Assembly (NCBI GenBank): GCA_013416795.1
Contig: RQSC01000568.1
Coordinates: 3,929-12,334, forward strand
Direction of reading: 5' to 3'
Origin: Prasinococcaceae sp. CCMP 1430
Taxonomy: Eukaryota; Plantae; Prasinodermophyta
DNA: 8,406 nt
In this document: in pieces, positions 1 to 8,406 of the stretch
Layout: every line of letters begins with the position of its first letter
How positions within the stretch are numbered: the first letter of the stretch is position 1
The notes under the pieces: model-generated
What the model saw: only the letters and a program-made list of their open reading frames with translations
Database searches by the model: none
What the model was told of the DNA's origin: nothing
Made by a program: the position numbers and the translations under genes

Positions 1-85
1 CGTTTTTCCGTGCGTTCCAAGCCGTTGGTCGGTCGCGCGTGCGATTTGACCTCGGCGGCGCGCGCGGGCCGCCGCGTCGGCCGCT

Positions 86-104
86 GCGCGCGCGCGCGCG
101 CGCG
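86..104. repeat. (GC)n dinucleotide run
   Basis: 19 nt of alternating G/C. Confidence 0.9.
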
Positions 105-490
105 ACCCCCAACCAACCGCGCCGCCAGGTGGAAAAAACGCAAACGAAACCTTCATCAAATGTCATTGAGGGCGAGGCAAAAATGGACCCTTTCTAGGAT
201 ATACCTCAAACTTGGCGCGCGCGCGCGGCCGTCATCCCATCCACAGATGCCACGCGTGTGGCGTGGGCCGCGCAGGGGGACGCCGAGGGGAAGGGGGGGA
301 CCACATCGTGTGCCCCCGCCCGCTCCAGTGACCAGCCCGACGCCCCTCCCTCCCCCTTCCCTGCTCTTCTCCCCGCCCCGCGTGGGAGGAGGGAAGGTGA
401 GGGCAGGGAGGCGGTGGATAGGCGGGGGTTGGTCTCGGCGCCGGGCTCGAGCGCGGGGACACTGGCAGCGGGCGCCGGGCCGCGCGGCAG

Positions 491-3349
491 ATGGCGGTCT
501 TCCAGTGCCTGGCCGGGGGGGGATGGCAGCGGCACCGCGCGGCGGCCGAGGTGGGCGCGCGCGTCGAGGTGGGCGTGGTCGCGGTGGAAGGCGTGGGCGC
601 CGACGGCGCTGTGCCGCAGCTCGCGCTCGCGGGCAGCGGCGGCAGCCGTGCAACGGCCGCAGTGGCAGCGGCAGACGCGCACGCCGAGTACTACGTGGGC
701 TTGAAGTGGAAGCGCCTACCACGTGGTCGCAGGGGCGGCGCCGCCGCGCTCCGCACGCAGGTGACGCCGGCGACCGCTCCTTCTCGGATTGGCACGCTGC
801 GGTGGGAGGGGTTGGGCGGGCAGGACGAGGTGCAGCGCTTCTCCACCGCCGCAGTGCTTCGCGCGACGCCAATGCCCACTGGCAAGGGGGATGGAGGCGC
901 GTACGAGGCCACTGTGGGCGGGGGGATCGGTATGGGCGCAGATAGCAGGCGGTTCTCCCCGTGGGAGGTCTCGCTCACACTATACCAATGTGGCGGCGAG
1001 CGCGGCCGTGATACGCCACTCGCGCGCTGCGTCCTCGACGCGACGGCATACATCGGCGCCGAGGCCGAGCACGTCACGTTGGCAATGGTCGAGTGCGGCG
1101 GGAAGCGCGGAGGCGGCGCCCGTGACGCGGCCGCACGATACTCGCTCAGTGCGACGGTGCAGACGACGCTCGCACGCGCCGAGAGCGAGTCAAGCGCCTC
1201 CGAAGAAGAGCAGCTCGTGCTGGCGCCGGCGTCGTCGACCGATCCTACCCCAGCGATGGCAGAGCCCGCGCCCGAGCTGGCGCCCCGCGCGCACAACGGC
1301 GGCGGACGCACGTGGTGGGGCATGAGGAGGAAGCGAGCTGCGCACGCGCGCTCGATGTCAGCTGGCTCAAGCGTATCCATCCTTTCGGATGCCACGACAA
1401 GCGAAAGTGGCAGCGACGGAATGAGCTCCGTCACAGGGCACGCGGCGTCCGCCACACCCTCGGGCACCGTGGAGGCGGTTTCGGACATCGCGGGCCTGCT
1501 CGAGGGGGCGGAGCACGAGCAGCAAGCGGCGGAGGATGTCCGCTCGGAGGACTCGCAGGAGCAGCAGCAAGTGCAAAAATCCAAGCGGGGTGGATTCTGG
1601 AGCTTCCTGCGGCCAGGTCGCGGTGGCACGCGAGGAGAGCGCGGTGTGCGGAAGCGCGATGGTGCGAAGGCGACGATGGGTGGCGGCGACAGAAGCGTGG
1701 ACGCTGTGGAGGCCCGAACTCCCAAGCACCAGCGCACGTCCTCGCGCAACGTGGTGCACGAGAGCAGTCTCCAGAAGTGCGCCCCGACCTCCAATGAGGA
1801 TGAGCAGCGCATGCTCGAGCGGGCGCTCTCCGAGAGTCACCACATGTACTACCGATACGCTGATGGCCTAAACTTGCCCGGGGCGGCGCCTCTACCGGGC
1901 GGCGACCACGAGGACGCAGCCCAAACCAGTGGGCGCAGTGCTGGCGGCGCAGGCGAGCAGGAGCGACACGCCGACCGCCCGGCTGCGCCCAAAGGGCCTG
2001 CGCTGCGCCAATCGCCCTCCCTGGGCAGACTACTCGCTGCGCCAGAGGGCGTCTGGACGCACACAGACCTGTCGGATCTCGCGAGCGCGCCACATGAGGG
2101 CACCGCAGAGGTGGCGGCGACCGAAGAGGCCGAGCGTGATGGTACACGAGAACAGAAGGTTCCACTTCCCGCGGAGGTACTCTTTGCAACGATGGATCAG
2201 AGCTCAGCGGCAGCGCGCGGCAGCTCCGCGTGTGCCGTCCTGGCCCTCGAGCTCGCAGCGGCCACACTTGCTGGCGCCGCCCCGCAGCACGCTCGCGATG
2301 GGAAGCGTGCCACTGAGATCTTCGACGAGCTGTTGATCTCCGGAAGCTCTACGTGGCGAGCGATGGTGGAGGAGGATGCGCGCAGGCCAGAGCCGCTCTT
2401 CCGCGACGGCTACTTTGACATCGAGACCGCACTGCAGTCTCTAAACGCGGAGCGACCACGCATGTGCATCGACTACCAGCGTAGTTGCATCGGCTTCGTG
2501 CCTCTCACCACAGGGCTCGAGCAGCGCGCGGGGGGGATCGAGGGCGCGCGCGCGCGCCGCGCGCGCGGCGCTGCAGCGCGCGACGTCGATACGGCGACAG
2601 CCGTCGGCGACGCCCGCGCGCGTGACAGGGCCGGCAGTGGCTCCAACAGCCCGGCTGGCAAGGGCACCGTGGTGGTCGCGGTGACGACGTCCAAGCGCGG
2701 CGACGCGGGCGAGCGCCGGGGCGGCGATGCCAGCGCGGTGAGCGTCATCGGCGACGGCGCTCCGAGTAGTGGCAGTGCCTCGATGGTAGGCAGCGCTCAG
2801 CATCAGGATGGCTGCGTGGACGAAGTTGGCCCTGACGTGCTGTCGGCGGCCTCGCCGCTTGCGTCACCGCTTCAGCTCGTGACGCCGCTTAGGGCCGTGG
2901 AGGGCGGTCACCACGCGGCAATGAGCAACGGGAAAGCCGTTTGGCACAGCTTGCGACCGGGCACGTACATTGTCGCGTGGTGCGACCACTTCACGCTGCT
3001 GCACTATGACGGTGGCACGCGCGAGTGTGTGGTGGTGGACTCTCTCGGCGAGCGGCTGTTTCCGGGCAACCCCCGCGCGTTCGCGCTTCGTTTCACGGCA
3101 GAAGGTTCGGACGGGGAGGATCCGCTTCGCCTAGTGCGGCGCTACTTTGAGGAGTACGTCGGTGACGTGCATATGGCCGATGTCGCGCGAGAGATGCGCC
3201 GCGGATCGATCGACTACGAAGCTTGCCTTCGCCGCACCCAGATCGAACTCAGCTGCGTGATACCTGTTGGTGAAGACCTGGAGCTGGCGTTGCGGGGAGG
3301 CGCCCAGGCCGTGGAGGCCACACCACCCGCAACTCCGGCGTGCGTGTGA
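491..3349 (+). CDS. Intronless 952-aa protein: N-terminal NT-C2 (EEIG1/EHBP1-type C2) domain plus conserved C-terminal domain; resembles the uncharacterised plant At3g11760 (F26K24.5)-like family
   Basis: Long ATG-to-TGA ORF. N-terminal motifs YVGLKWK and FSPWEVSLTL...LARCVLD. C-terminal motifs LFATMDQ..RGSSAC, FDELLISGSSTWR, YFDIET, SCIGF, AMS...VW, YIVAWCDHF, VVDSLGERLF..AFALRF, which I recognise from memory as matching the plant family. No database search run. Confidence 0.8.
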   Translation: MAVFQCLAGGGWQRHRAAAEVGARVEVGVVAVEGVGADGAVPQLALAGSGGSRATAAVAAADAHAEYYVGLKWKRLPRGRRGGAAALRTQVTPATAPSRIGTLRWEGLGGQDEVQRFSTAAVLRATPMPTGKGDGGAYEATVGGGIGMGADSRRFSPWEVSLTLYQCGGERGRDTPLARCVLDATAYIGAEAEHVTLAMVECGGKRGGGARDAAARYSLSATVQTTLARAESESSASEEEQLVLAPASSTDPTPAMAEPAPELAPRAHNGGGRTWWGMRRKRAAHARSMSAGSSVSILSDATTSESGSDGMSSVTGHAASATPSGTVEAVSDIAGLLEGAEHEQQAAEDVRSEDSQEQQQVQKSKRGGFWSFLRPGRGGTRGERGVRKRDGAKATMGGGDRSVDAVEARTPKHQRTSSRNVVHESSLQKCAPTSNEDEQRMLERALSESHHMYYRYADGLNLPGAAPLPGGDHEDAAQTSGRSAGGAGEQERHADRPAAPKGPALRQSPSLGRLLAAPEGVWTHTDLSDLASAPHEGTAEVAATEEAERDGTREQKVPLPAEVLFATMDQSSAAARGSSACAVLALELAAATLAGAAPQHARDGKRATEIFDELLISGSSTWRAMVEEDARRPEPLFRDGYFDIETALQSLNAERPRMCIDYQRSCIGFVPLTTGLEQRAGGIEGARARRARGAAARDVDTATAVGDARARDRAGSGSNSPAGKGTVVVAVTTSKRGDAGERRGGDASAVSVIGDGAPSSGSASMVGSAQHQDGCVDEVGPDVLSAASPLASPLQLVTPLRAVEGGHHAAMSNGKAVWHSLRPGTYIVAWCDHFTLLHYDGGTRECVVVDSLGERLFPGNPRAFALRFTAEGSDGEDPLRLVRRYFEEYVGDVHMADVAREMRRGSIDYEACLRRTQIELSCVIPVGEDLELALRGGAQAVEATPPATPACV

Positions 3350-3627
3350 GGACGTGATTCGGGAGCGGGTGGGCTGCCAAATGGCGGGCGCAGGCGCCGC
3401 TAGCTAGCTATGATATAGTTAGAGGGAGCCGCGGACGACACATATAAGGACGCCCTGGCTGTCGCTGTACCGGCGTCGGAGTGCGCGCGTCGGCTTGGCT
3501 GCGAATACTAACGTGGTCGGGGTATTACGAGGGCTGACCCTTCGAAGTCACACAGCCGCGCGTGGCGCGAGTGCGACGATTAGTGGTCGCTGCCTGCACC
3601 GAACTGCTAATGGGTGACTATCTGCAT

Positions 3628-4628
3628 TCACACGAGGTTGCTCCCGTAGATGAGCGATGCAGCGGTCTGCGGGCGCGCGGCGGTCGCCGGCCTGCTAGCG
3701 ACTCCCGCGACGCGCATGTCTGCGGGGTCGATGCGAGGCAGGTCGCCGCGGCGGCTGCCCGGGCGCGCAGTCGAGGGGCGCGGGGGCGGCGGCGCCTCCC
3801 CATGCGCGACAGGCCAGGCATAGTCAGCGTGAGAAGATGACGTGGTGGGCCGCGGCACGCCCATGCTGGCCCACTGCCCACTGCCGATCCCACCGGTGCG
3901 CAGATTGTCCAAAAAGGCGCCGGTAGGGAGAGGAACGACGTCCCCGCCAAGGTGGTCGGCGTACGCCGGACGGTCGCCGCTCATCGGGCTGTGATGCTCG
4001 TCGGTGGCGGCTGCCGCGTCCTCCTCATTGAGGGTGAGCACGTCTGCGCCACCCTGGACTGAGTACGTCGCGTTGGCCGCGGTGCCGGGCATGGGTACCA
4101 TGTTGGCGCCGAGGTGGTCGTCATACGCCGGACCAGGGCCCTGAGGCGCGTCCGTGCGACGCTCCAGGACCGCGTCGATGCCCGAGCGCTCGGCCTCGGC
4201 GAGGGGCACCGCGGTCGAGAGCTCTAGGTGGTCGTCGTACGCCGGACCAGGGCCCTGAGGCGCGTCCGTGCGACGCTCCAGGACTGCGTCGATGCCCGAG
4301 CGCTCGGCCTCGGCGAGGGGCACCGCGGTCGAGCGCTCGAGGTGGTCAACGAAGGCCGGCGAGGGGTGCGCTTGCGTCCCATCGTCCATTGCATATGGCG
4401 GCGGCGCGGGCGCCGTGAGCGGGCGGCTCGCGGGCACGTCTCCGGTGACGCCCCACGGCGCGCGCGCCGCCGGGGCAGGTCCGCACAGCCTACGCGAGGG
4501 GCGGCGCACGCCGTAGCTCTCAAGCCCGGTCGGGGGCGCATCTCGCCCGCCGCCCTGCCGCTCCGCGTGGCCAGCGACGCGCGCGGGTCGGCGTCGATGC
4601 CCCACGGGGGCAGACTCGCGTGCGCCAT
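3628..4628 (-). CDS. Unknown protein with internal PA(Y/F)xDHLxxxxVP repeats and RPx(T/S)A motifs; 5' end uncertain, probably ATG 4628 with an apparent 1-nt frameshift at 4532-4536
   Basis: Open frame 3628-4647 with a tandem repeat whose differences are mostly silent. The first in-frame ATG is 4389, but protein-like sequence (APWGVTGD, RPLTA) continues upstream. ATG 4628 (MAHASLPPWGID) is in a different frame. Confidence 0.65.
4112..4347. repeat. 114-bp direct tandem duplication (about 2.07 copies) encoding a 38-aa repeat
   Basis: Copies 4112-4225 and 4226-4339 differ at 4 of 114 positions (hand alignment). A partial third copy, AGGTGGTC, starts at 4340. Confidence 0.95.
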
Positions 4629-4723
4629 CGCCAAGCGCACAGGTCAACGCGGAAGAGGGGGGAGAGAGAGTGGGGGGGAGGGGGCGCTCGCGCCGCGCGC
4701 GTGTGGCCCCGCGTGCACAGGCA

Positions 4724-4746
4724 GCGCGCGCGCGCGCGCGCGCGCG
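4724..4746. repeat. (GC)n dinucleotide run
   Basis: 23 nt of alternating G/C, about 100 bp upstream of the minus-strand gene start at 4628. Confidence 0.9.
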
Positions 4747-4960
4747 TTCTCAAACCGCCACACACACGGCCTGTTGTGCCCCCTGCGCCTCGGGTATGTC
4801 GGCGCCTTCCACCGTGTATAACCGCACGCGTGCTGCCACCCCGACCAGCCGATCGCAGCCGGAACACCACAGCGCTGGAACAGGAACAGCCTGCCGGATC
4901 AACCCGAACGCAACGCCGCGAGGGCATGCGGAGTGACGTCCCCGAAAACGCAGAACACCC

Positions 4961-5220
4961 ATCATACAATTCCACAGACTTTTTTAACGGAGTTGTTTTT
5001 AATGATTACTTACGCGCTTTTTATAATACAATGACATATGCCGTTGCATGGAATGTATGTAAGATACGTTCTTTTACCCAGGATTGCGTCAACGAAATTC
5101 CATTAAAAGTCGAAAATCCCATGGCAAGCGCACTACTTCCAGCGCCGTCTGTGCAGTGCCATCGCATCGCGCATGTTTTTCTAAAGCTGCGGTTCAAAAT
5201 CATCATATGGCGCTTTTTTT
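4961..5220. other. AT-rich intergenic island
   Basis: Hand count gives 55 G+C in 160 nt (about 34%) over 4961-5120, with T and A tracts, against GC-rich flanks. Confidence 0.85.
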
Positions 5221-5525
5221 GGCGTGCGTTTCCGCGTGCGGGATCGCGGCGCGGCGCGGCCGAAATGTCGATCTCGCGGGCGGCGGCTCCGCCGGCGCTT
5301 ATTAGGGCGCGTGCATTGGCGAGGCTCGCCCGGACAGGCAGGCAGCGGGCGCCACCAACCGATGCCGCCGGCCGGAATTCCGGAGCCGCGCGCCCCAAAA
5401 AGTGAGCCACGAGGCCAATTTGGAGAGGAAATCGACGGTGATTCTGATTCTCGCCGGCCCCTGCGCGGGCCGGCCGCAGTGCGGGGCGGCGCCAAGCTGG
5501 CGCCGCGCGCGCTCGCGCCGGGGGG

Positions 5526-5526
5526 N
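5526..5526. other. Single N, probably an assembly gap or contig join
   Basis: N at 5526. Coding-like minus-strand sequence lies to its right and non-coding-like sequence to its left. Confidence 0.7.
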
Positions 5527-6081
5527 CAGCGGCGGCTCGCTTGAGGATGCGCTCGAGCTCGCGGGTGCCCGCCGCGGCCGCGCGCATCTGATGCGCGCGC
5601 CTCCGTGCAGATTCGGGAGTCTCGGATCCACGGGCACTTTGCGCGGAGACGTCGGTGCCACCATCGGCGCCGCTGCGCGCAGGCGTGCTAGGCGACGAAG
5701 GTCGCGATGGCCCGCCGCCTGGTCCGCTACCCACGGGCCTCGAAGGGGACGGCGAAAAGCTCCTGGCTTGACTTGCAGCAGCACGCGCTAGCGCAGAGCT
5801 CCCACTGCTCGACGGCGGCCGCGGGCTCGGCGGTGGGGAGGCGGCCGTTGCGACGGTCGGTGGCGCGTCGACACTGATGGCACCACCGAGTGGCGTCGTC
5901 GTCGTCGTCGCCGCCGCCGCAGCCGCCGCCGCCGCCGCCTCTGCCGCAGAAGCTGCCGCCGCCACGCCGACGTGCGCCTGCTGCGTTCTGCGCGCCCATC
6001 GTCTTGGTGCACGCGCGGTGGAATCACGCGCCACCGTCGGGCGACCGGCCGCGCCCCCCCTAGCGTCGCAGCGGCTGGCAT
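5527..6081 (-). CDS. Partial Ala/Ser/Pro/Thr-rich protein of unknown function ('gene X'), truncated at the N
   Basis: In the frame VGVAAAASAAE...SPPPSPRPPSSS...ESARRRAHQMRAAAAGTRELERILKRAAA, nucleotide variation in the repeats falls at synonymous third positions (GCG/GCA/GCT; CCA/CCG/CCT), and the end has typical GC3 codons. Candidate start accATG at 6081 needs one extra base in the C7 run at 6054-6060. Confidence 0.55.
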
Positions 6082-6146
6082 GGTCGCGCGCTCTGCGCAC
6101 GCCCTGGCGCTCGTGGCGATGGCGGCTCTCACGTGCGGAGCGTGTT

Positions 6147-6321
<175 letters not shown>

Positions 6322-6484
6322 GCGACAGGCGGACACTTGCCATCATTGCAGCAGCTGGGGGACTTTGTGTACCTGTGAATACACATATTACTACGCAACC
6401 GCGCCCCGCTGACGTCCCCCATACTGCGCCGCGCCGCGCACGCGCTGCGATCGCGCGAACAACGGTGCGCGTCCAAACCCTTCC

Positions 6485-6511
6485 CGCAAGCACTTCTGCC
6501 AAGTGCTTGCG
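6485..6511. other. Perfect 11-bp hairpin with a 5-nt loop in the convergent 3' region
   Basis: CGCAAGCACTT-CTGCC-AAGTGCTTGCG. Confidence 0.8.
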
Positions 6512-6851
6512 TGCGCTGAGAGTGGGCGGTGGGTGCGTGCACGCGTGTTGTATGATGCGCGACCCGGTGCCCTCGTAGCCCCACACATGAGCGAGGGTGC
6601 GCTCCCCACTCCCCAGGGGATACGAAAGGCGTCGACGTCAAGCGGCGCGTGGGCGCGCATGCTGCCGCACAGCTCGCGCGGGTGGGTGCAAAATACAGAT
6701 CTTAGTGTCTTGGGGGAGCAAATAGTGGTACATGCACACACAGCGGCGTCCCCGGCGCGCAGCGTCCGCGTGTGCCGAGCCTCGACGTCTGCAGCAGGGC
6801 GGCGGGGGCGGGAGCGAGGCGCCGCCGAACCTGCTACTCCGGGACGCGCTA

Positions 6852-7571
6852 CTATCGGAACAGCGGCGGGGGGCCTCTCCTCATCGTCGTGAGCGGGAAC
6901 TCATTGACGGGCGCGCGCGTCTCCCGCAGCTGGCGGTACGCCTCTCGTATGTGCACGGGTCGCACGGGGCCCACGTGCCCCATCTGCGAGCCGACCTTGC
7001 GGGCTCTCTCGATGAGCTCGCCGACCATCATCTTGGCGAGGCCAGCCATGACGATCGTGGGCTGGTGCGGCACCGTGGCTCCAACGACCGACGCCATGAC
7101 GCGATTCACCGTGCGGCGTCCAAGCGCCGAGCGCCTGTAGAGCTCGTAGCGCGCAAGCTGCTCCTTTGTGAGGCTGTCGTACAGCTCCTTGCTGAACTCG
7201 AGCCCTGCAGCTCTCCCTTCGGCCAGAGCCTCTTCGTGGGCCTCGTCCACGTCGGCGTCCTCGTCGTCATCGCTGCTGTCCGCCGCATCCTTCTCTTCCT
7301 CGTCCTTGGCAGCCTCCTTCTCCTTGCCCTTGCCGGCTGTAGCGTCATCGGCAACAACGGGCGGCGGCACGGAGCCAAGGTCGCCCTCGTCGAACTTGGC
7401 TGCCTCGAGCGCGATGCGGATCTTCTCCTCCTTCTTCGGCTTCGGACGGCGGATGCGCTTTGGCCTCGGCTTCTTGGTGACGCCACCCTTGGGAGGCGGA
7501 GCCCCCGCCGCGCCCGCGGCCCCTGGAATCGCACCCGCGCTGGGTGCCTCGGGCACGTTGAAGCCCACCAT
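6852..7571 (-). CDS. TAF11: TFIID subunit 11 (TAFII28 histone-fold), intronless, 239 aa
   Basis: C-terminal [28 protein letters not shown]....[19 protein letters not shown]...[15 protein letters not shown] matches the TAF11 histone fold. Lys-rich and acidic N-terminus. First ATG is at 7571; the track start at 7616 is GTG. Confidence 0.92.
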
Positions 7572-7624
7572 GCTCTGCACGCCGCGCGGCGGCGCGGCGG
7601 CCGTCTCGCGCCCCACGCGCCCTC

Positions 7625-7650
7625 CTGTGTGGGCCCCGCCCCTCGCCCCG
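7625..7650. promoter_or_regulatory. Candidate promoter elements between TAF11 and the RPS18 exon block (TGGGCC site-II-like motif, GC boxes)
   Basis: TGGGCC at 7630-7635 followed by CCCGCCCC-like tracts, 59-64 bp upstream of the TAF11 ATG. Confidence 0.35.
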
Positions 7651-7715
7651 CATGCCTCCGCGGGGGCGGTTTTCCCCTGGCGCCGCCGCTGCCGCCGCCG
7701 CGCGCGAGCGCGTCG

Positions 7716-7744
7716 CTGACTCGCGCCGCGCGCGCACGCTGCAG
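7716..7744 (+). other. Intron 3' end (CTGAC branch point, CTGCAG) with no identifiable upstream RPS18 exon in the window
   Basis: CTGAC at 7716-7720 and AG at 7743-7744. RPS18 homology starts exactly at 7745. Confidence 0.85.
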
Positions 7745-7851
7745 GTGAACGGCAAGGAGAAGACCAACATCGCCCTCACCAAGATCCGCGGTGTGGGCCG
7801 CCGCTTCGCCACGCTGTGCTGCAAGAAGGCCGACGTCGACCTCAACAAGCG
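7745..7851 (+). CDS. RPS18: 40S ribosomal protein S18, internal exon (called E2 here)
   Basis: [35 protein letters not shown](R), followed by the donor GTGCGT at 7852. Confidence 0.96.
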
Positions 7852-8194
7852 GTGCGTGGCGCGGCCGCTCGCGTAGTGCATGCCCCGCCGGCGGTTCGGG
7901 GCGATTTATTTTTTTTGGTTACGGCGCGCGCGGGCCGCCGCCGCGCCGTGGGTGCTGGCGAGTGCCTCCCCCCCGGGCGCGGGGGCGCGCCTGGGCGTCC
8001 AACCCCCCGCCCCGCCGCCATGCCACATCGGCAGAAGTACCCCGTCGCCGTGACCGCGCGTGCGCGCGCGCGCTCCGCGCGCGTCCGGGGGGGGGACCCC
8101 CGCGTGCGCCCAGTGCCGCGCGCGCGCCTTCTCGCGTTTTTTTTTTTTTTTCCGTGCGCTGACAGACCTACCCCTTCGCCGCATGCGCCCACAG
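7852..8194 (+). other. 343-nt phase-2 cis intron of RPS18
   Basis: GTGCGT donor, T15 tract at 8137-8151, CTGAC at 8159-8163, CAG ending at 8194. The split codon CG|C restores K-R-A-G-E-L. Confidence 0.93.
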
Positions 8195-8351
8195 CGCTGG
8201 TGAGCTGCGCGCGGAGGAGCTCGAGGAGCTGATTGTGATCATCAACAACCCCCGCCAGTTCAAGATCCCCGACTGGATGCTTAACCGCTCCAAGAACTAC
8301 AAGGACGGCCGCTTCTTCCAGGCGACCTCGAACGTCCTCGACACCTGCCTG
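8195..8351 (+). CDS. RPS18: 40S ribosomal protein S18, internal exon (called E3 here)
   Basis: [52 protein letters not shown], followed by the donor GTACGT at 8352 (phase 0). Confidence 0.96.
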
Positions 8352-8406
8352 GTACGTCCGCCCGCCTGCGCGCTCCGCCTCCTCGTCCTCATCCTCATCG
8401 TCGAAG

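What the first reader, a model, noticed from the sequence alone, without database searches (positions are those of the whole stretch)
7572..7744. Orphan acceptor: the RPS18 5' exon is missing and only 173 bp separate E2 from the head-to-head TAF11 start
Seen: a complete branch point and acceptor precede E2, but I found no sequence encoding the conserved N-terminal ~19 aa (typically MSLV...FQHILR.LNTN) on either strand in a manual scan of the window. The interval holds a TGGGCC motif and GC boxes, as a promoter would. Inference: either TAF11 and everything upstream sit inside a >7 kb first intron, which is implausible and would also contain E4, or E2-E3 is transcribed from a promoter shared with TAF11 and receives exon 1 in trans, or this is a duplication or assembly breakpoint.
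Basis: partly seen in the sequence, partly recalled or inferred. Interest (0 to 1): 0.7.

Follow-up and report, generated by a model that had tools for sequence, protein, structure and literature searches.

The report
Assembly misjoin splits ribosomal gene RPS18
The "missing first exon" of this alga's ribosomal protein gene is an assembly error: independent contigs and RNA show an ordinary four-exon gene spliced in the normal way, so there is no trans-splicing here.

Summary
E2 of uS13/RPS18 (7745-7851) has a branch point and acceptor. It lies 173 bp from the TAF11 start codon (7571, minus strand). No exon 1 exists anywhere in the window. The last exon (6184-6321) also lies upstream of E2-E3.

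This layout is a chimeric assembly, not biology. Seven independent environmental contigs (about 99% identical) and assembled contigs from two DNA runs of the same organism (identical letters) all give the order E1, 160-nt intron, E2, E3, E4, then convergent TAF11, then a PRKCSH-like gene. No contig bridges any of the window's odd junctions: 5311/5312, the N at 5526, about 5886-5908, 7652, and 8382/8383. Window 5312-5525 and 5527-5885 are snippets from the middle of other long contigs.

The interval 7572-7744 is 80 bp of true TAF11 5' flank, one junction base, and the last 92 nt of RPS18 intron 1. A metatranscriptome contig reads E1-E2-E3-E4, and its E1 letters match the cis exon found in scaffold L001. 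That exon encodes MSYMAPPEFNHILRVMNTN.

Trans-splicing and a giant first intron are refuted. Interest is low.

The parts
1..5311 (.). Piece A, correctly assembled. It holds the 952-aa ORF (491-3349, +), a repeat-containing ORF (3628-4647, -), and the AT-richer 5' flank of RPS18. It stops about 100 nt before the true RPS18 ATG.
   Evidence: Window 82-5311 is colinear with L001 14462-9051 at 96-99% identity. The X1 and X3 contigs cover 5000-5311 and then run on for about 210 nt unlike the window.
5312..5525 (.). Foreign snippet 1, 214 bp that belong to another locus of the same organism.
   Evidence: It has no match in L001-L007. In X1 it is positions 8957-9170 of a 13,689-nt contig; in X3 it is 5201-5414 of a 14,375-nt contig. 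Both contigs are unlike the window on either side.
5526..5526 (.). A single N at a misjoin.
   Evidence: the pieces on its two sides come from different contigs and different strands.
5527..5908 (.). Foreign snippet 2, from a third locus and laid in the opposite orientation. It ends in a (GTC)n run that abuts the (GCC)n of RPS18 intron 3.
   Evidence: Window 5527-5885 matches positions 2889-3247 of a 6,292-nt X1 contig on the minus strand, and 8954-9312 of a 12,200-nt X3 contig. It has no match in L001-L007.
5909..6183 (+). The 3' part of RPS18 intron 3. It begins with a (GCC)n microsatellite (5909-5963) and ends with the acceptor cag.
   Evidence: In L001-L004 this sequence directly follows the E3 donor region (window 8352-8382).
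6184..6321 (+). RPS18/uS13 exon 4, the last exon, with the stop codon.
   Evidence: Pfam Ribosomal_S13 profile positions 94-127, E=1e-15. RNA contigs join window 8350 to 6183. The exon is identical to L001.
6852..7571 (-). TAF11 (TAFII28 histone-fold) gene, a single ORF of 239 aa, convergent with RPS18.
   Evidence: Pfam PF04719, E=4e-27. The identical protein is called on 7 independent contigs.
7572..7651 (-). Genuine 5' flank of TAF11, including the TGGGCC motif and GC box. In the real genome it runs on towards a PRKCSH-like gene.
   Evidence: Every locus aligned at the junction (L002, L003, L004, L006, L007) continues after window 7651 with the same different sequence (gcggcgcgcgcggcgccctcg...). 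L001 does the same. X1 contig 4 and X3 contig 26 run on for 3,716 nt unlike the window.
7652..7652 (.). The junction base of the misjoin. Together with 7653-7654 it creates an artefactual ATG in frame with E2 (ORF 7652-7876).
   Evidence: The blastn blocks end at 7651 and restart at 7653, and the contig pieces do the same. The ORF is listed.
7653..7744 (+). The last 92 nt of RPS18 intron 1, with the branch point CTGAC (7716-7720) and the acceptor AG (7743-7744).
   Evidence: It matches L001 8827-8736, which is the 3' end of the 160-nt intron that follows E1.
7745..7851 (+). RPS18/uS13 exon 2.
   Evidence: Pfam Ribosomal_S13 profile positions 8-41. RNA contigs cover it, with an E1 loose end before 7745.
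7852..8194 (+). RPS18 intron 2 (GT..AG, 343 nt).
   Evidence: RNA joint 7850 to 8194, skipping 343 nt, seen in X15 and X16.
8195..8351 (+). RPS18/uS13 exon 3.
   Evidence: Pfam Ribosomal_S13 profile positions 44-90. RNA contigs cover it.
8352..8382 (+). The first 31 nt of RPS18 intron 3 (donor gtacgt), up to the start of the (GCC)n microsatellite.
   Evidence: It matches L001-L004 up to 8382, after which they continue with (GCC)n into window 5909 onwards.
8383..8406 (.). An unmatched 24-nt tail (tcctcgtcctcatcc...), which is another misjoin or the contig end.
   Evidence: It has no counterpart in L001-L004 at this place. The contig pieces stop at 8379.

Best explanation
The window is a chimeric (misassembled) contig. 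In the real genome, RPS18/uS13 is an ordinary cis-spliced gene of four exons: E1 57 nt, intron 160; E2 107 nt, intron about 340; E3 157 nt, intron about 304-320 containing a (GCC)n microsatellite; E4 138 nt. That gives 152 codons plus the stop. TAF11 lies convergent downstream, and a PRKCSH-like gene lies head-to-head with TAF11. In the window, the 223-bp GC-rich stretch that carries the 5'UTR, E1 and the first 68 nt of intron 1 has been lost. Two unrelated snippets stand in its place. The block holding the end of intron 1, E2, E3 and the start of intron 3 has been pasted after the TAF11 5' flank instead of before intron 3 and E4. The reported interval 7572-7744 is therefore 80 bp of TAF11 flank, 1 junction base, and 92 nt of intron 1. 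The acceptor is not an orphan; its donor was lost by the assembler. Shown here: the colinear order in independent contigs, the absence of any contig bridging the window's junctions, and the E1-E2-E3-E4 mRNA. Inferred: the cause, namely assembler or scaffolder error at GC-rich low-complexity sequence.
For: (1): in scaffold L001 the order is window 82-5311, then 223 bp, then window 7653-8382, then window 5909-7651, then new DNA. L002-L004 also join 8382 to 5909. All seven loci leave the window at 7651.
(2): L001 carries E1 (8952-8896, MSYMAPPEFNHILRVMNTN, donor gtgcgt) 160 nt upstream of E2. The four exons sum to 459 nt. E2-E4 are identical to the window.
(3): the E1 peptide aligns to residues 1-19 of eukaryotic uS13 chains. 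35 of 37 hits are uS13; the best E-value is 0.008 for a 20-aa query.
(4): contigs of two DNA runs with identical letters cover the window only as separate pieces (5000-5311, 5312-5525, 5527-5885, 5954-7651, 7653-8379). X3 contig 26 holds 7653-8379, then 65 nt, then 5954-7651, then 3,716 nt of other DNA. The X1 contigs overlap by exactly 30 nt (k-1) in the same order. All these contigs have single-copy depth (55-96 in X3).
(5): RNA contig X15 record 15 (391 nt, depth 178) reads 92 loose nt, then E2, then E3, then 36 nt of E4. Its loose end AACCACATCCTGCGTGTCATGAACACCAAC matches L001 E1 exactly and is absent from the window.
(6): the holder runs have 0.97 of the sampled words. The missing share is about what the junction-spanning 31-mers would account for.
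(7): the breakpoints lie at (GCC)n, (GTC)n and GC-rich low-complexity sequence.
Against: I could see only assembled contigs (Logan), not raw reads, so rare molecules with the window's junctions cannot be excluded. Only one scaffold (L001) shows the letters of E1 in genomic context; for the source organism itself the A-E1-E2 continuity rests on contig lengths and overlaps. I do not know which assembler made the window, so the error mechanism is inferred.
Confidence: 0.94

Rival explanations
1. A real structural rearrangement or a partial second copy exists in the sequenced strain. Under this reading a broken RPS18 locus (E4-TAF11-E2-E3, without E1) sits in the DNA beside, or instead of, the canonical one.
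For: The window exists as an assembled sequence, and all its pieces are present in the organism's runs (share 0.97).
Against: No contig bridges any of the five junctions. Contigs run straight through the breakpoints into other sequence without branching, at single-copy depth. The two inserted snippets sit in the middle of 6-14 kb contigs. Seven environmental contigs all show the canonical order.
Confidence: 0.04
2. RPS18 is made by trans-splicing. E2-E3 would be transcribed from a promoter shared with TAF11 and receive exon 1 from a distant locus, and E3 would be joined to an upstream E4.
For: On the window alone, RNA contigs 'go back' from 8350 to 6183 and carry a loose E1 before 7745. Taken at face value that would look like permuted or trans joining.
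Against: The same RNA is fully colinear with L001 and with the organism's own DNA contigs, where E1 lies 160 nt upstream of E2 and E4 lies downstream of E3. All introns are plain GT..AG.
Confidence: 0.01
3. TAF11 and everything upstream sit inside a giant first intron of RPS18.
For: None beyond the absence of E1 from the window.
Against: E1 is absent from the whole window. Intron 1 is 160 nt in L001. E4 would have to lie inside intron 1.
Confidence: 0.005

Closest known systems
Eukaryotic small-subunit ribosomal protein uS13 (RPS18) gene
   Same: It has the Ribosomal_S13 domain across E2-E4, the conserved N-terminus M-S-x-x-x-P-x-x-F-x-H-I-L-R-x-x-N-T-N, 152 codons, and high expression in metatranscriptomes.
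   Different: Nothing functional differs. Only the window's representation is scrambled.
Chimeric contigs or misjoins at low-complexity, GC-rich repeats in draft assemblies
   Same: The junctions are unsupported by other assemblies of the same organism. The breakpoints lie at microsatellites and GC-rich runs, a single N marks one join, and short snippets from other loci are inserted.
   Different: There are unusually many joins (five) within 3.1 kb. The assembler responsible is unknown.
Genuinely split, trans-spliced nuclear genes (from my own knowledge: for example Giardia Hsp90 and dynein genes, and SL trans-splicing)
   Same: Read on its own, the window shows an acceptor without a cis donor and exons out of order.
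   Different: Here the donor exon lies in cis 160 nt upstream in the real genome. No spliced leader or distant exon is involved.

Membership tests
uS13/RPS18 | Ribosomal_S13 (PF00416) domain | tested here: met
   E2, E3 and E4 hit profile positions 8-41, 44-90 and 94-127, with E-values of 4e-7, 1e-7 and 1e-15.
uS13/RPS18 | Conserved eukaryotic N-terminal 19 residues | tested here: met
   It is absent from the window. It is present in L001 8952-8896 and aligns to residues 1-19 of PDB uS13 chains. The same letters are seen in mRNA.
uS13/RPS18 | Complete reading frame of about 152 aa | tested here: met
   Exon lengths of 57+107+157+138 give 459 nt with matching phases and a stop codon. The joined protein itself was neither built nor searched.
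TAF11 (TAFII28) | TAFII28 histone-fold region (PF04719) | tested here: met
   Residues 130-214 cover profile positions 2-86 of 86, E=4e-27.
Trans-spliced or split nuclear gene | No donor exon in cis; the exon pieces lie at separate loci in the real genome | tested here: not met
   E1 lies in cis 160 nt upstream of E2 in L001. The organism's own contigs are consistent with the same order.
Trans-spliced or split nuclear gene | The mRNA join cannot be explained by any colinear genomic DNA | tested here: not met
   The RNA contig E1-E2-E3-E4 is colinear with L001.
Assembly chimera | Junctions not bridged by independent assemblies or by the organism's own read-derived contigs | tested here: met
   0 of 7 loci and 0 of the listed X1 and X3 contig pieces bridge 5311/5312, 5526, 5886-5908, 7652 or 8382/8383.
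Assembly chimera | Raw reads of the source sample do not span the junctions | not testable with these tools
   All the runs served were Logan contigs, not raw reads.

The most novel reading that the evidence does not exclude
The sequenced strain really carries, in some or all cells, a rearranged RPS18-TAF11 locus in which E2-E3 were moved behind TAF11 and E1 was lost. That would be a recent complex rearrangement at GC-rich microsatellites, coexisting with the canonical locus.
Probability: 0.03. Interest if true: 0.25.

Novelty: not a real feature. Interest (0 to 1): 0.04.

Why it matters
It matters only as quality control. This contig, and probably others in this draft genome, contains misjoins at GC-rich low-complexity sequence. 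Those misjoins can mimic split genes, orphan splice sites, shared promoters and organelle/nuclear chimeras. Findings from this assembly that rest on an odd adjacency should be checked against independent contigs before they are interpreted. The true RPS18 gene model (four exons, E1 = MSYMAPPEFNHILRVMNTN) can be used to correct the annotation.

Tried and rejected
- **Exon 1 in the window.** I searched by nucleotide (up to 12 of 57 substitutions), by peptide (up to 5 of 12 substitutions, six frames) and by its 30-nt 3' end (up to 3 mismatches). Nothing was found.
- **In-frame ATG at 7652.** I considered this ORF (7652-7876) as an alternative start. I rejected it because the ATG is created by the junction base itself.
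- **Tandem duplication of the E2-E3-E4-TAF11 unit.** Rejected. Contig depths are single-copy, contigs pass the breakpoints without branching, and the A-to-C link consists of two unrelated snippets.
- **Two minor RNA joints.** For 8287 to 6183 (X15), the loose-end letters at 8288 differ from the window, so it probably comes from a related organism at the 90% likeness setting. For 7851 to 6184 (E2 to E4, X16, depth 27) I saw no such evidence; it may be the same thing or rare exon-3 skipping, which would shift the frame. Neither was pursued.
- **Earlier scan notes.** A search for notes on misassembly in this genome found nothing.
- **Published P. coloniale genome.** It is described as 22 chromosomes assembled from PacBio reads (PMC7455551). 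The scan's genome has notes on 184 pieces, so it is probably another assembly. I did not test the species identity.
- **Costly searches.** I did not use the large protein searches because the protein identities were never in doubt.

Full report
**1. What is in the window**

The window is about 70% G+C. On the plus strand it carries three pieces of a eukaryotic uS13/RPS18 gene (coordinates):

| Exon | Window coordinates | First residues | Flanking signals |
|---|---|---|---|
| E2 | 7745-7851 | VNGKEK... | donor gtgcgt |
| E3 | 8195-8351 | (R)AGELRAE... | donor gtacgt |
| E4 (last) | 6184-6321 | RDDLERL... to stop | acceptor cag |

- Pfam places these on Ribosomal_S13 profile positions 8-41, 44-90 and 94-127.
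- The minus-strand ORF 6852-7571 is TAF11 (PF04719, E=4e-27).
- The interval 7572-7744 is indeed 173 bp. It holds TGGGCC (7630-7635), a GC box, CTGAC (7716-7720) and the acceptor AG (7743-7744).
- No exon 1 is present anywhere in the window.
The oddity is larger than the title says, because the last exon lies 1.4 kb upstream of E2 on the same strand, with TAF11 in between.

**2. Independent assemblies show a different, ordinary order**

The exact TAF11 protein is called on seven public contigs: four TARA metagenome scaffolds and three Logan contigs, L001-L007. I compared the window with them by blastn.

- In L001 (14.5 kb, 96-99% identity), read in window orientation, the order is:
  - window 82-5311,
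  - 223 bp that the window lacks,
  - window 7653-8382 (E2, E3),
  - window 5909-7651 (rest of intron 3, E4, TAF11),
  - new DNA that carries a PRKCSH-like gene head-to-head with TAF11.
- L002, L003 and L004 also join 8382 directly to 5909 through a (GCC)n microsatellite of variable length.
- All seven loci leave the window at 7651. The six whose letters I read there (L001; L002, L003, L004, L006 and L007) continue with the same different sequence.
- Window 5312-5908 has no counterpart in any of them.

**3. Exon 1 exists in cis**

- The 223 bp missing from the window contain ATG TCG TAC ATG GCG ... AAC ACC AAC followed by gtgcgt (L001 8952-8896, minus strand). This encodes MSYMAPPEFNHILRVMNTN.
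- A 160-nt intron follows. Its last 92 nt are window 7653-7744.
- The exon lengths 57+107+157+138 sum to 459 nt with consistent phases, which is 152 codons plus the stop. E2-E4 are letter-identical between the window and L001.
- A 20-residue translation of that exon aligns to residues 1-19 of solved eukaryotic uS13 chains. 35 of 37 hits are uS13 or S18, and the best E-value is 0.008, which is good for so short a query.

**4. The organism's own data agree**

Fourteen runs of one organism hold 0.97 of the sampled 31-mers of window 5000-8406. I laid contigs of two of them, X1 and X3, on the window. They match with zero differing letters, but only as separate pieces:

| Window piece | Where it sits in the run contigs |
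|---|---|
| 5000-5311 | A contig that then runs on for about 210 nt unlike the window |
| 5312-5525 | The middle of a 13.7-kb contig (X1) or a 14.4-kb contig (X3) |
| 5527-5885 | The middle of a 6.3-kb (X1) or 12.2-kb (X3) contig, on the other strand |
| 5954-7651 | A contig that runs on for 3,716 nt unlike the window |
| 7653-8379 | See below |

- X3 contig 26 (6,252 nt) contains 7653-8379, then 65 nt, then 5954-7651, then those 3,716 nt. This is the canonical order.
- I checked the orientation reading of that minus-strand record against the plus-strand X1 contig 4. Both show the same 3,716-nt extension beyond 7651.
- The X1 contigs overlap by 32+63-65 = 30 nt, which is k-1 for k=31, exactly as neighbours in a de Bruijn graph should.
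- Likewise, 210+42-30 = 222 nt fits the 223-bp stretch that holds E1.
- The contigs carrying the window's own pieces have comparable depths (55-96 in X3), so there is no sign of a duplication.
- The 3% of missing words is about what the junction-spanning 31-mers would amount to. This last point is my own inference.

**5. RNA evidence**

- A marine metatranscriptome contig (X15 record 15, 391 nt, depth 178) lies on E2 and E3 without a differing letter.
- It skips intron 2 (GT..AG, 343 nt) and then "goes back" from 8350 to 6183, which is E4.
- It has 92 loose nt before 7745. These end in AACCACATCCTGCGTGTCATGAACACCAAC.
- That string is the 3' end of E1 in L001 and is absent from the window.
- X16 shows the same E2-E3 and E3-E4 joints in its own contig; no E1 loose end was listed for it among the rows shown.
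- The mRNA is therefore E1-E2-E3-E4 with at least 35 nt of 5'UTR. It is colinear with the true genome.
- The "going back" joint and the loose end are what a normal mRNA looks like when laid on a scrambled reference.

**6. Interpretation**

- The reported interval is a composite of three parts:
  - 7572-7651 is the genuine TAF11 5' flank,
  - 7652 is a junction base,
  - 7653-7744 is the 3' end of RPS18 intron 1.
- The TGGGCC motif belongs to the TAF11 side. It reads TGGGCG in all six environmental contigs whose letters I read there.
- The ATG at 7652-7654, in frame with E2, is created by the join.
- The breakpoints fall at low-complexity sequence. (GTC)n meets (GCC)n at 5886-5963, 8382 is the start of the same (GCC)n, and both ends of the missing 223 bp are GC-rich.
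- I infer assembler or scaffolder error. The exact cause cannot be established here.

**7. Comparison and novelty**

- This is an ordinary cis-spliced ribosomal protein gene next to an ordinary TAF11 gene.
- The defining features of a trans-spliced gene were tested and not met.
- Earlier notes of this scan name the genome as Prasinoderma coloniale. The G+C content fits that species (69.8%, PMC7455551), but I did not test the identity.
- The published assembly is described as 22 chromosomes, whereas the scan's genome has notes on 184 pieces. It is probably a different, more fragmented assembly.

**8. Verdict**

This is not a real feature, and interest is very low except as a warning about this assembly.

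Noticed in passing
window 5909-5963 and 8352-8382; L001-L007: RPS18 intron 3 holds a (GCC)n microsatellite. Its length differs among the environmental contigs, and it is about 18 nt longer in the organism's own runs than in L001. Three Logan contigs end inside it. It is one of the places where the window's assembly went wrong.
   Followed up: partly
window 5312-5525 and 5527-5885: Two short snippets (214 and 359 bp) are cut from the middle of other 6-14 kb contigs of the same organism and separated by a single N. I did not identify their home loci. They have no Pfam signal in the ORF that crosses them.
   Followed up: partly
window 7652-7876 (+): A 74-aa ORF starts at an ATG created by the misjoin and runs in frame into E2. 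A gene caller could be fooled into predicting a uS13 with a false N-terminus.
   Followed up: yes
window 7630-7635: The TGGGCC motif in the TAF11 5' flank reads TGGGCG in the six environmental contigs read there (L001-L004, L006, L007), so it is not conserved within the species.
   Followed up: yes
L001 4395-5900 (-) and the same gene in L002-L007: The real head-to-head neighbour of TAF11 is a 501-aa PRKCSH-like (glucosidase II beta subunit) gene about 540 bp away. An amidohydrolase/DHOase gene and a WD40 gene follow. None of these is in the window.
   Followed up: partly
window 4106-4347 (-, inside ORF 3628-4647): A 114-bp tandem repeat (2.1 copies, 94% match) lies inside a Pfam-less 339-aa ORF. 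The blastn pattern suggests the copies are arranged somewhat differently in L001.
   Followed up: no
window 491-3349 (+): The 952-aa Pfam-less ORF is called intact at the same length on TARA scaffold L001, where the DNA is about 99% identical, so it is a real conserved gene of this alga. Another first-stage note reads its C-terminus as a papain-fold protease.
   Followed up: no
window 7851 to 6184 and 8287 to 6183 (RNA joints): Two minor metatranscriptome joints were seen. One joins E2 directly to E4 (X16, depth 27), which would shift the frame. The other leaves E3 at 8287 (X15, depth 15). They are probably contigs of related organisms at the 90% likeness setting, or rare mis-splicing.
   Followed up: no
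whole locus; The alga is present at about 99% identity in several TARA Oceans metagenomes. Its RPS18 mRNA is abundant in marine metatranscriptomes, with contig depth of about 180.
   Followed up: partly
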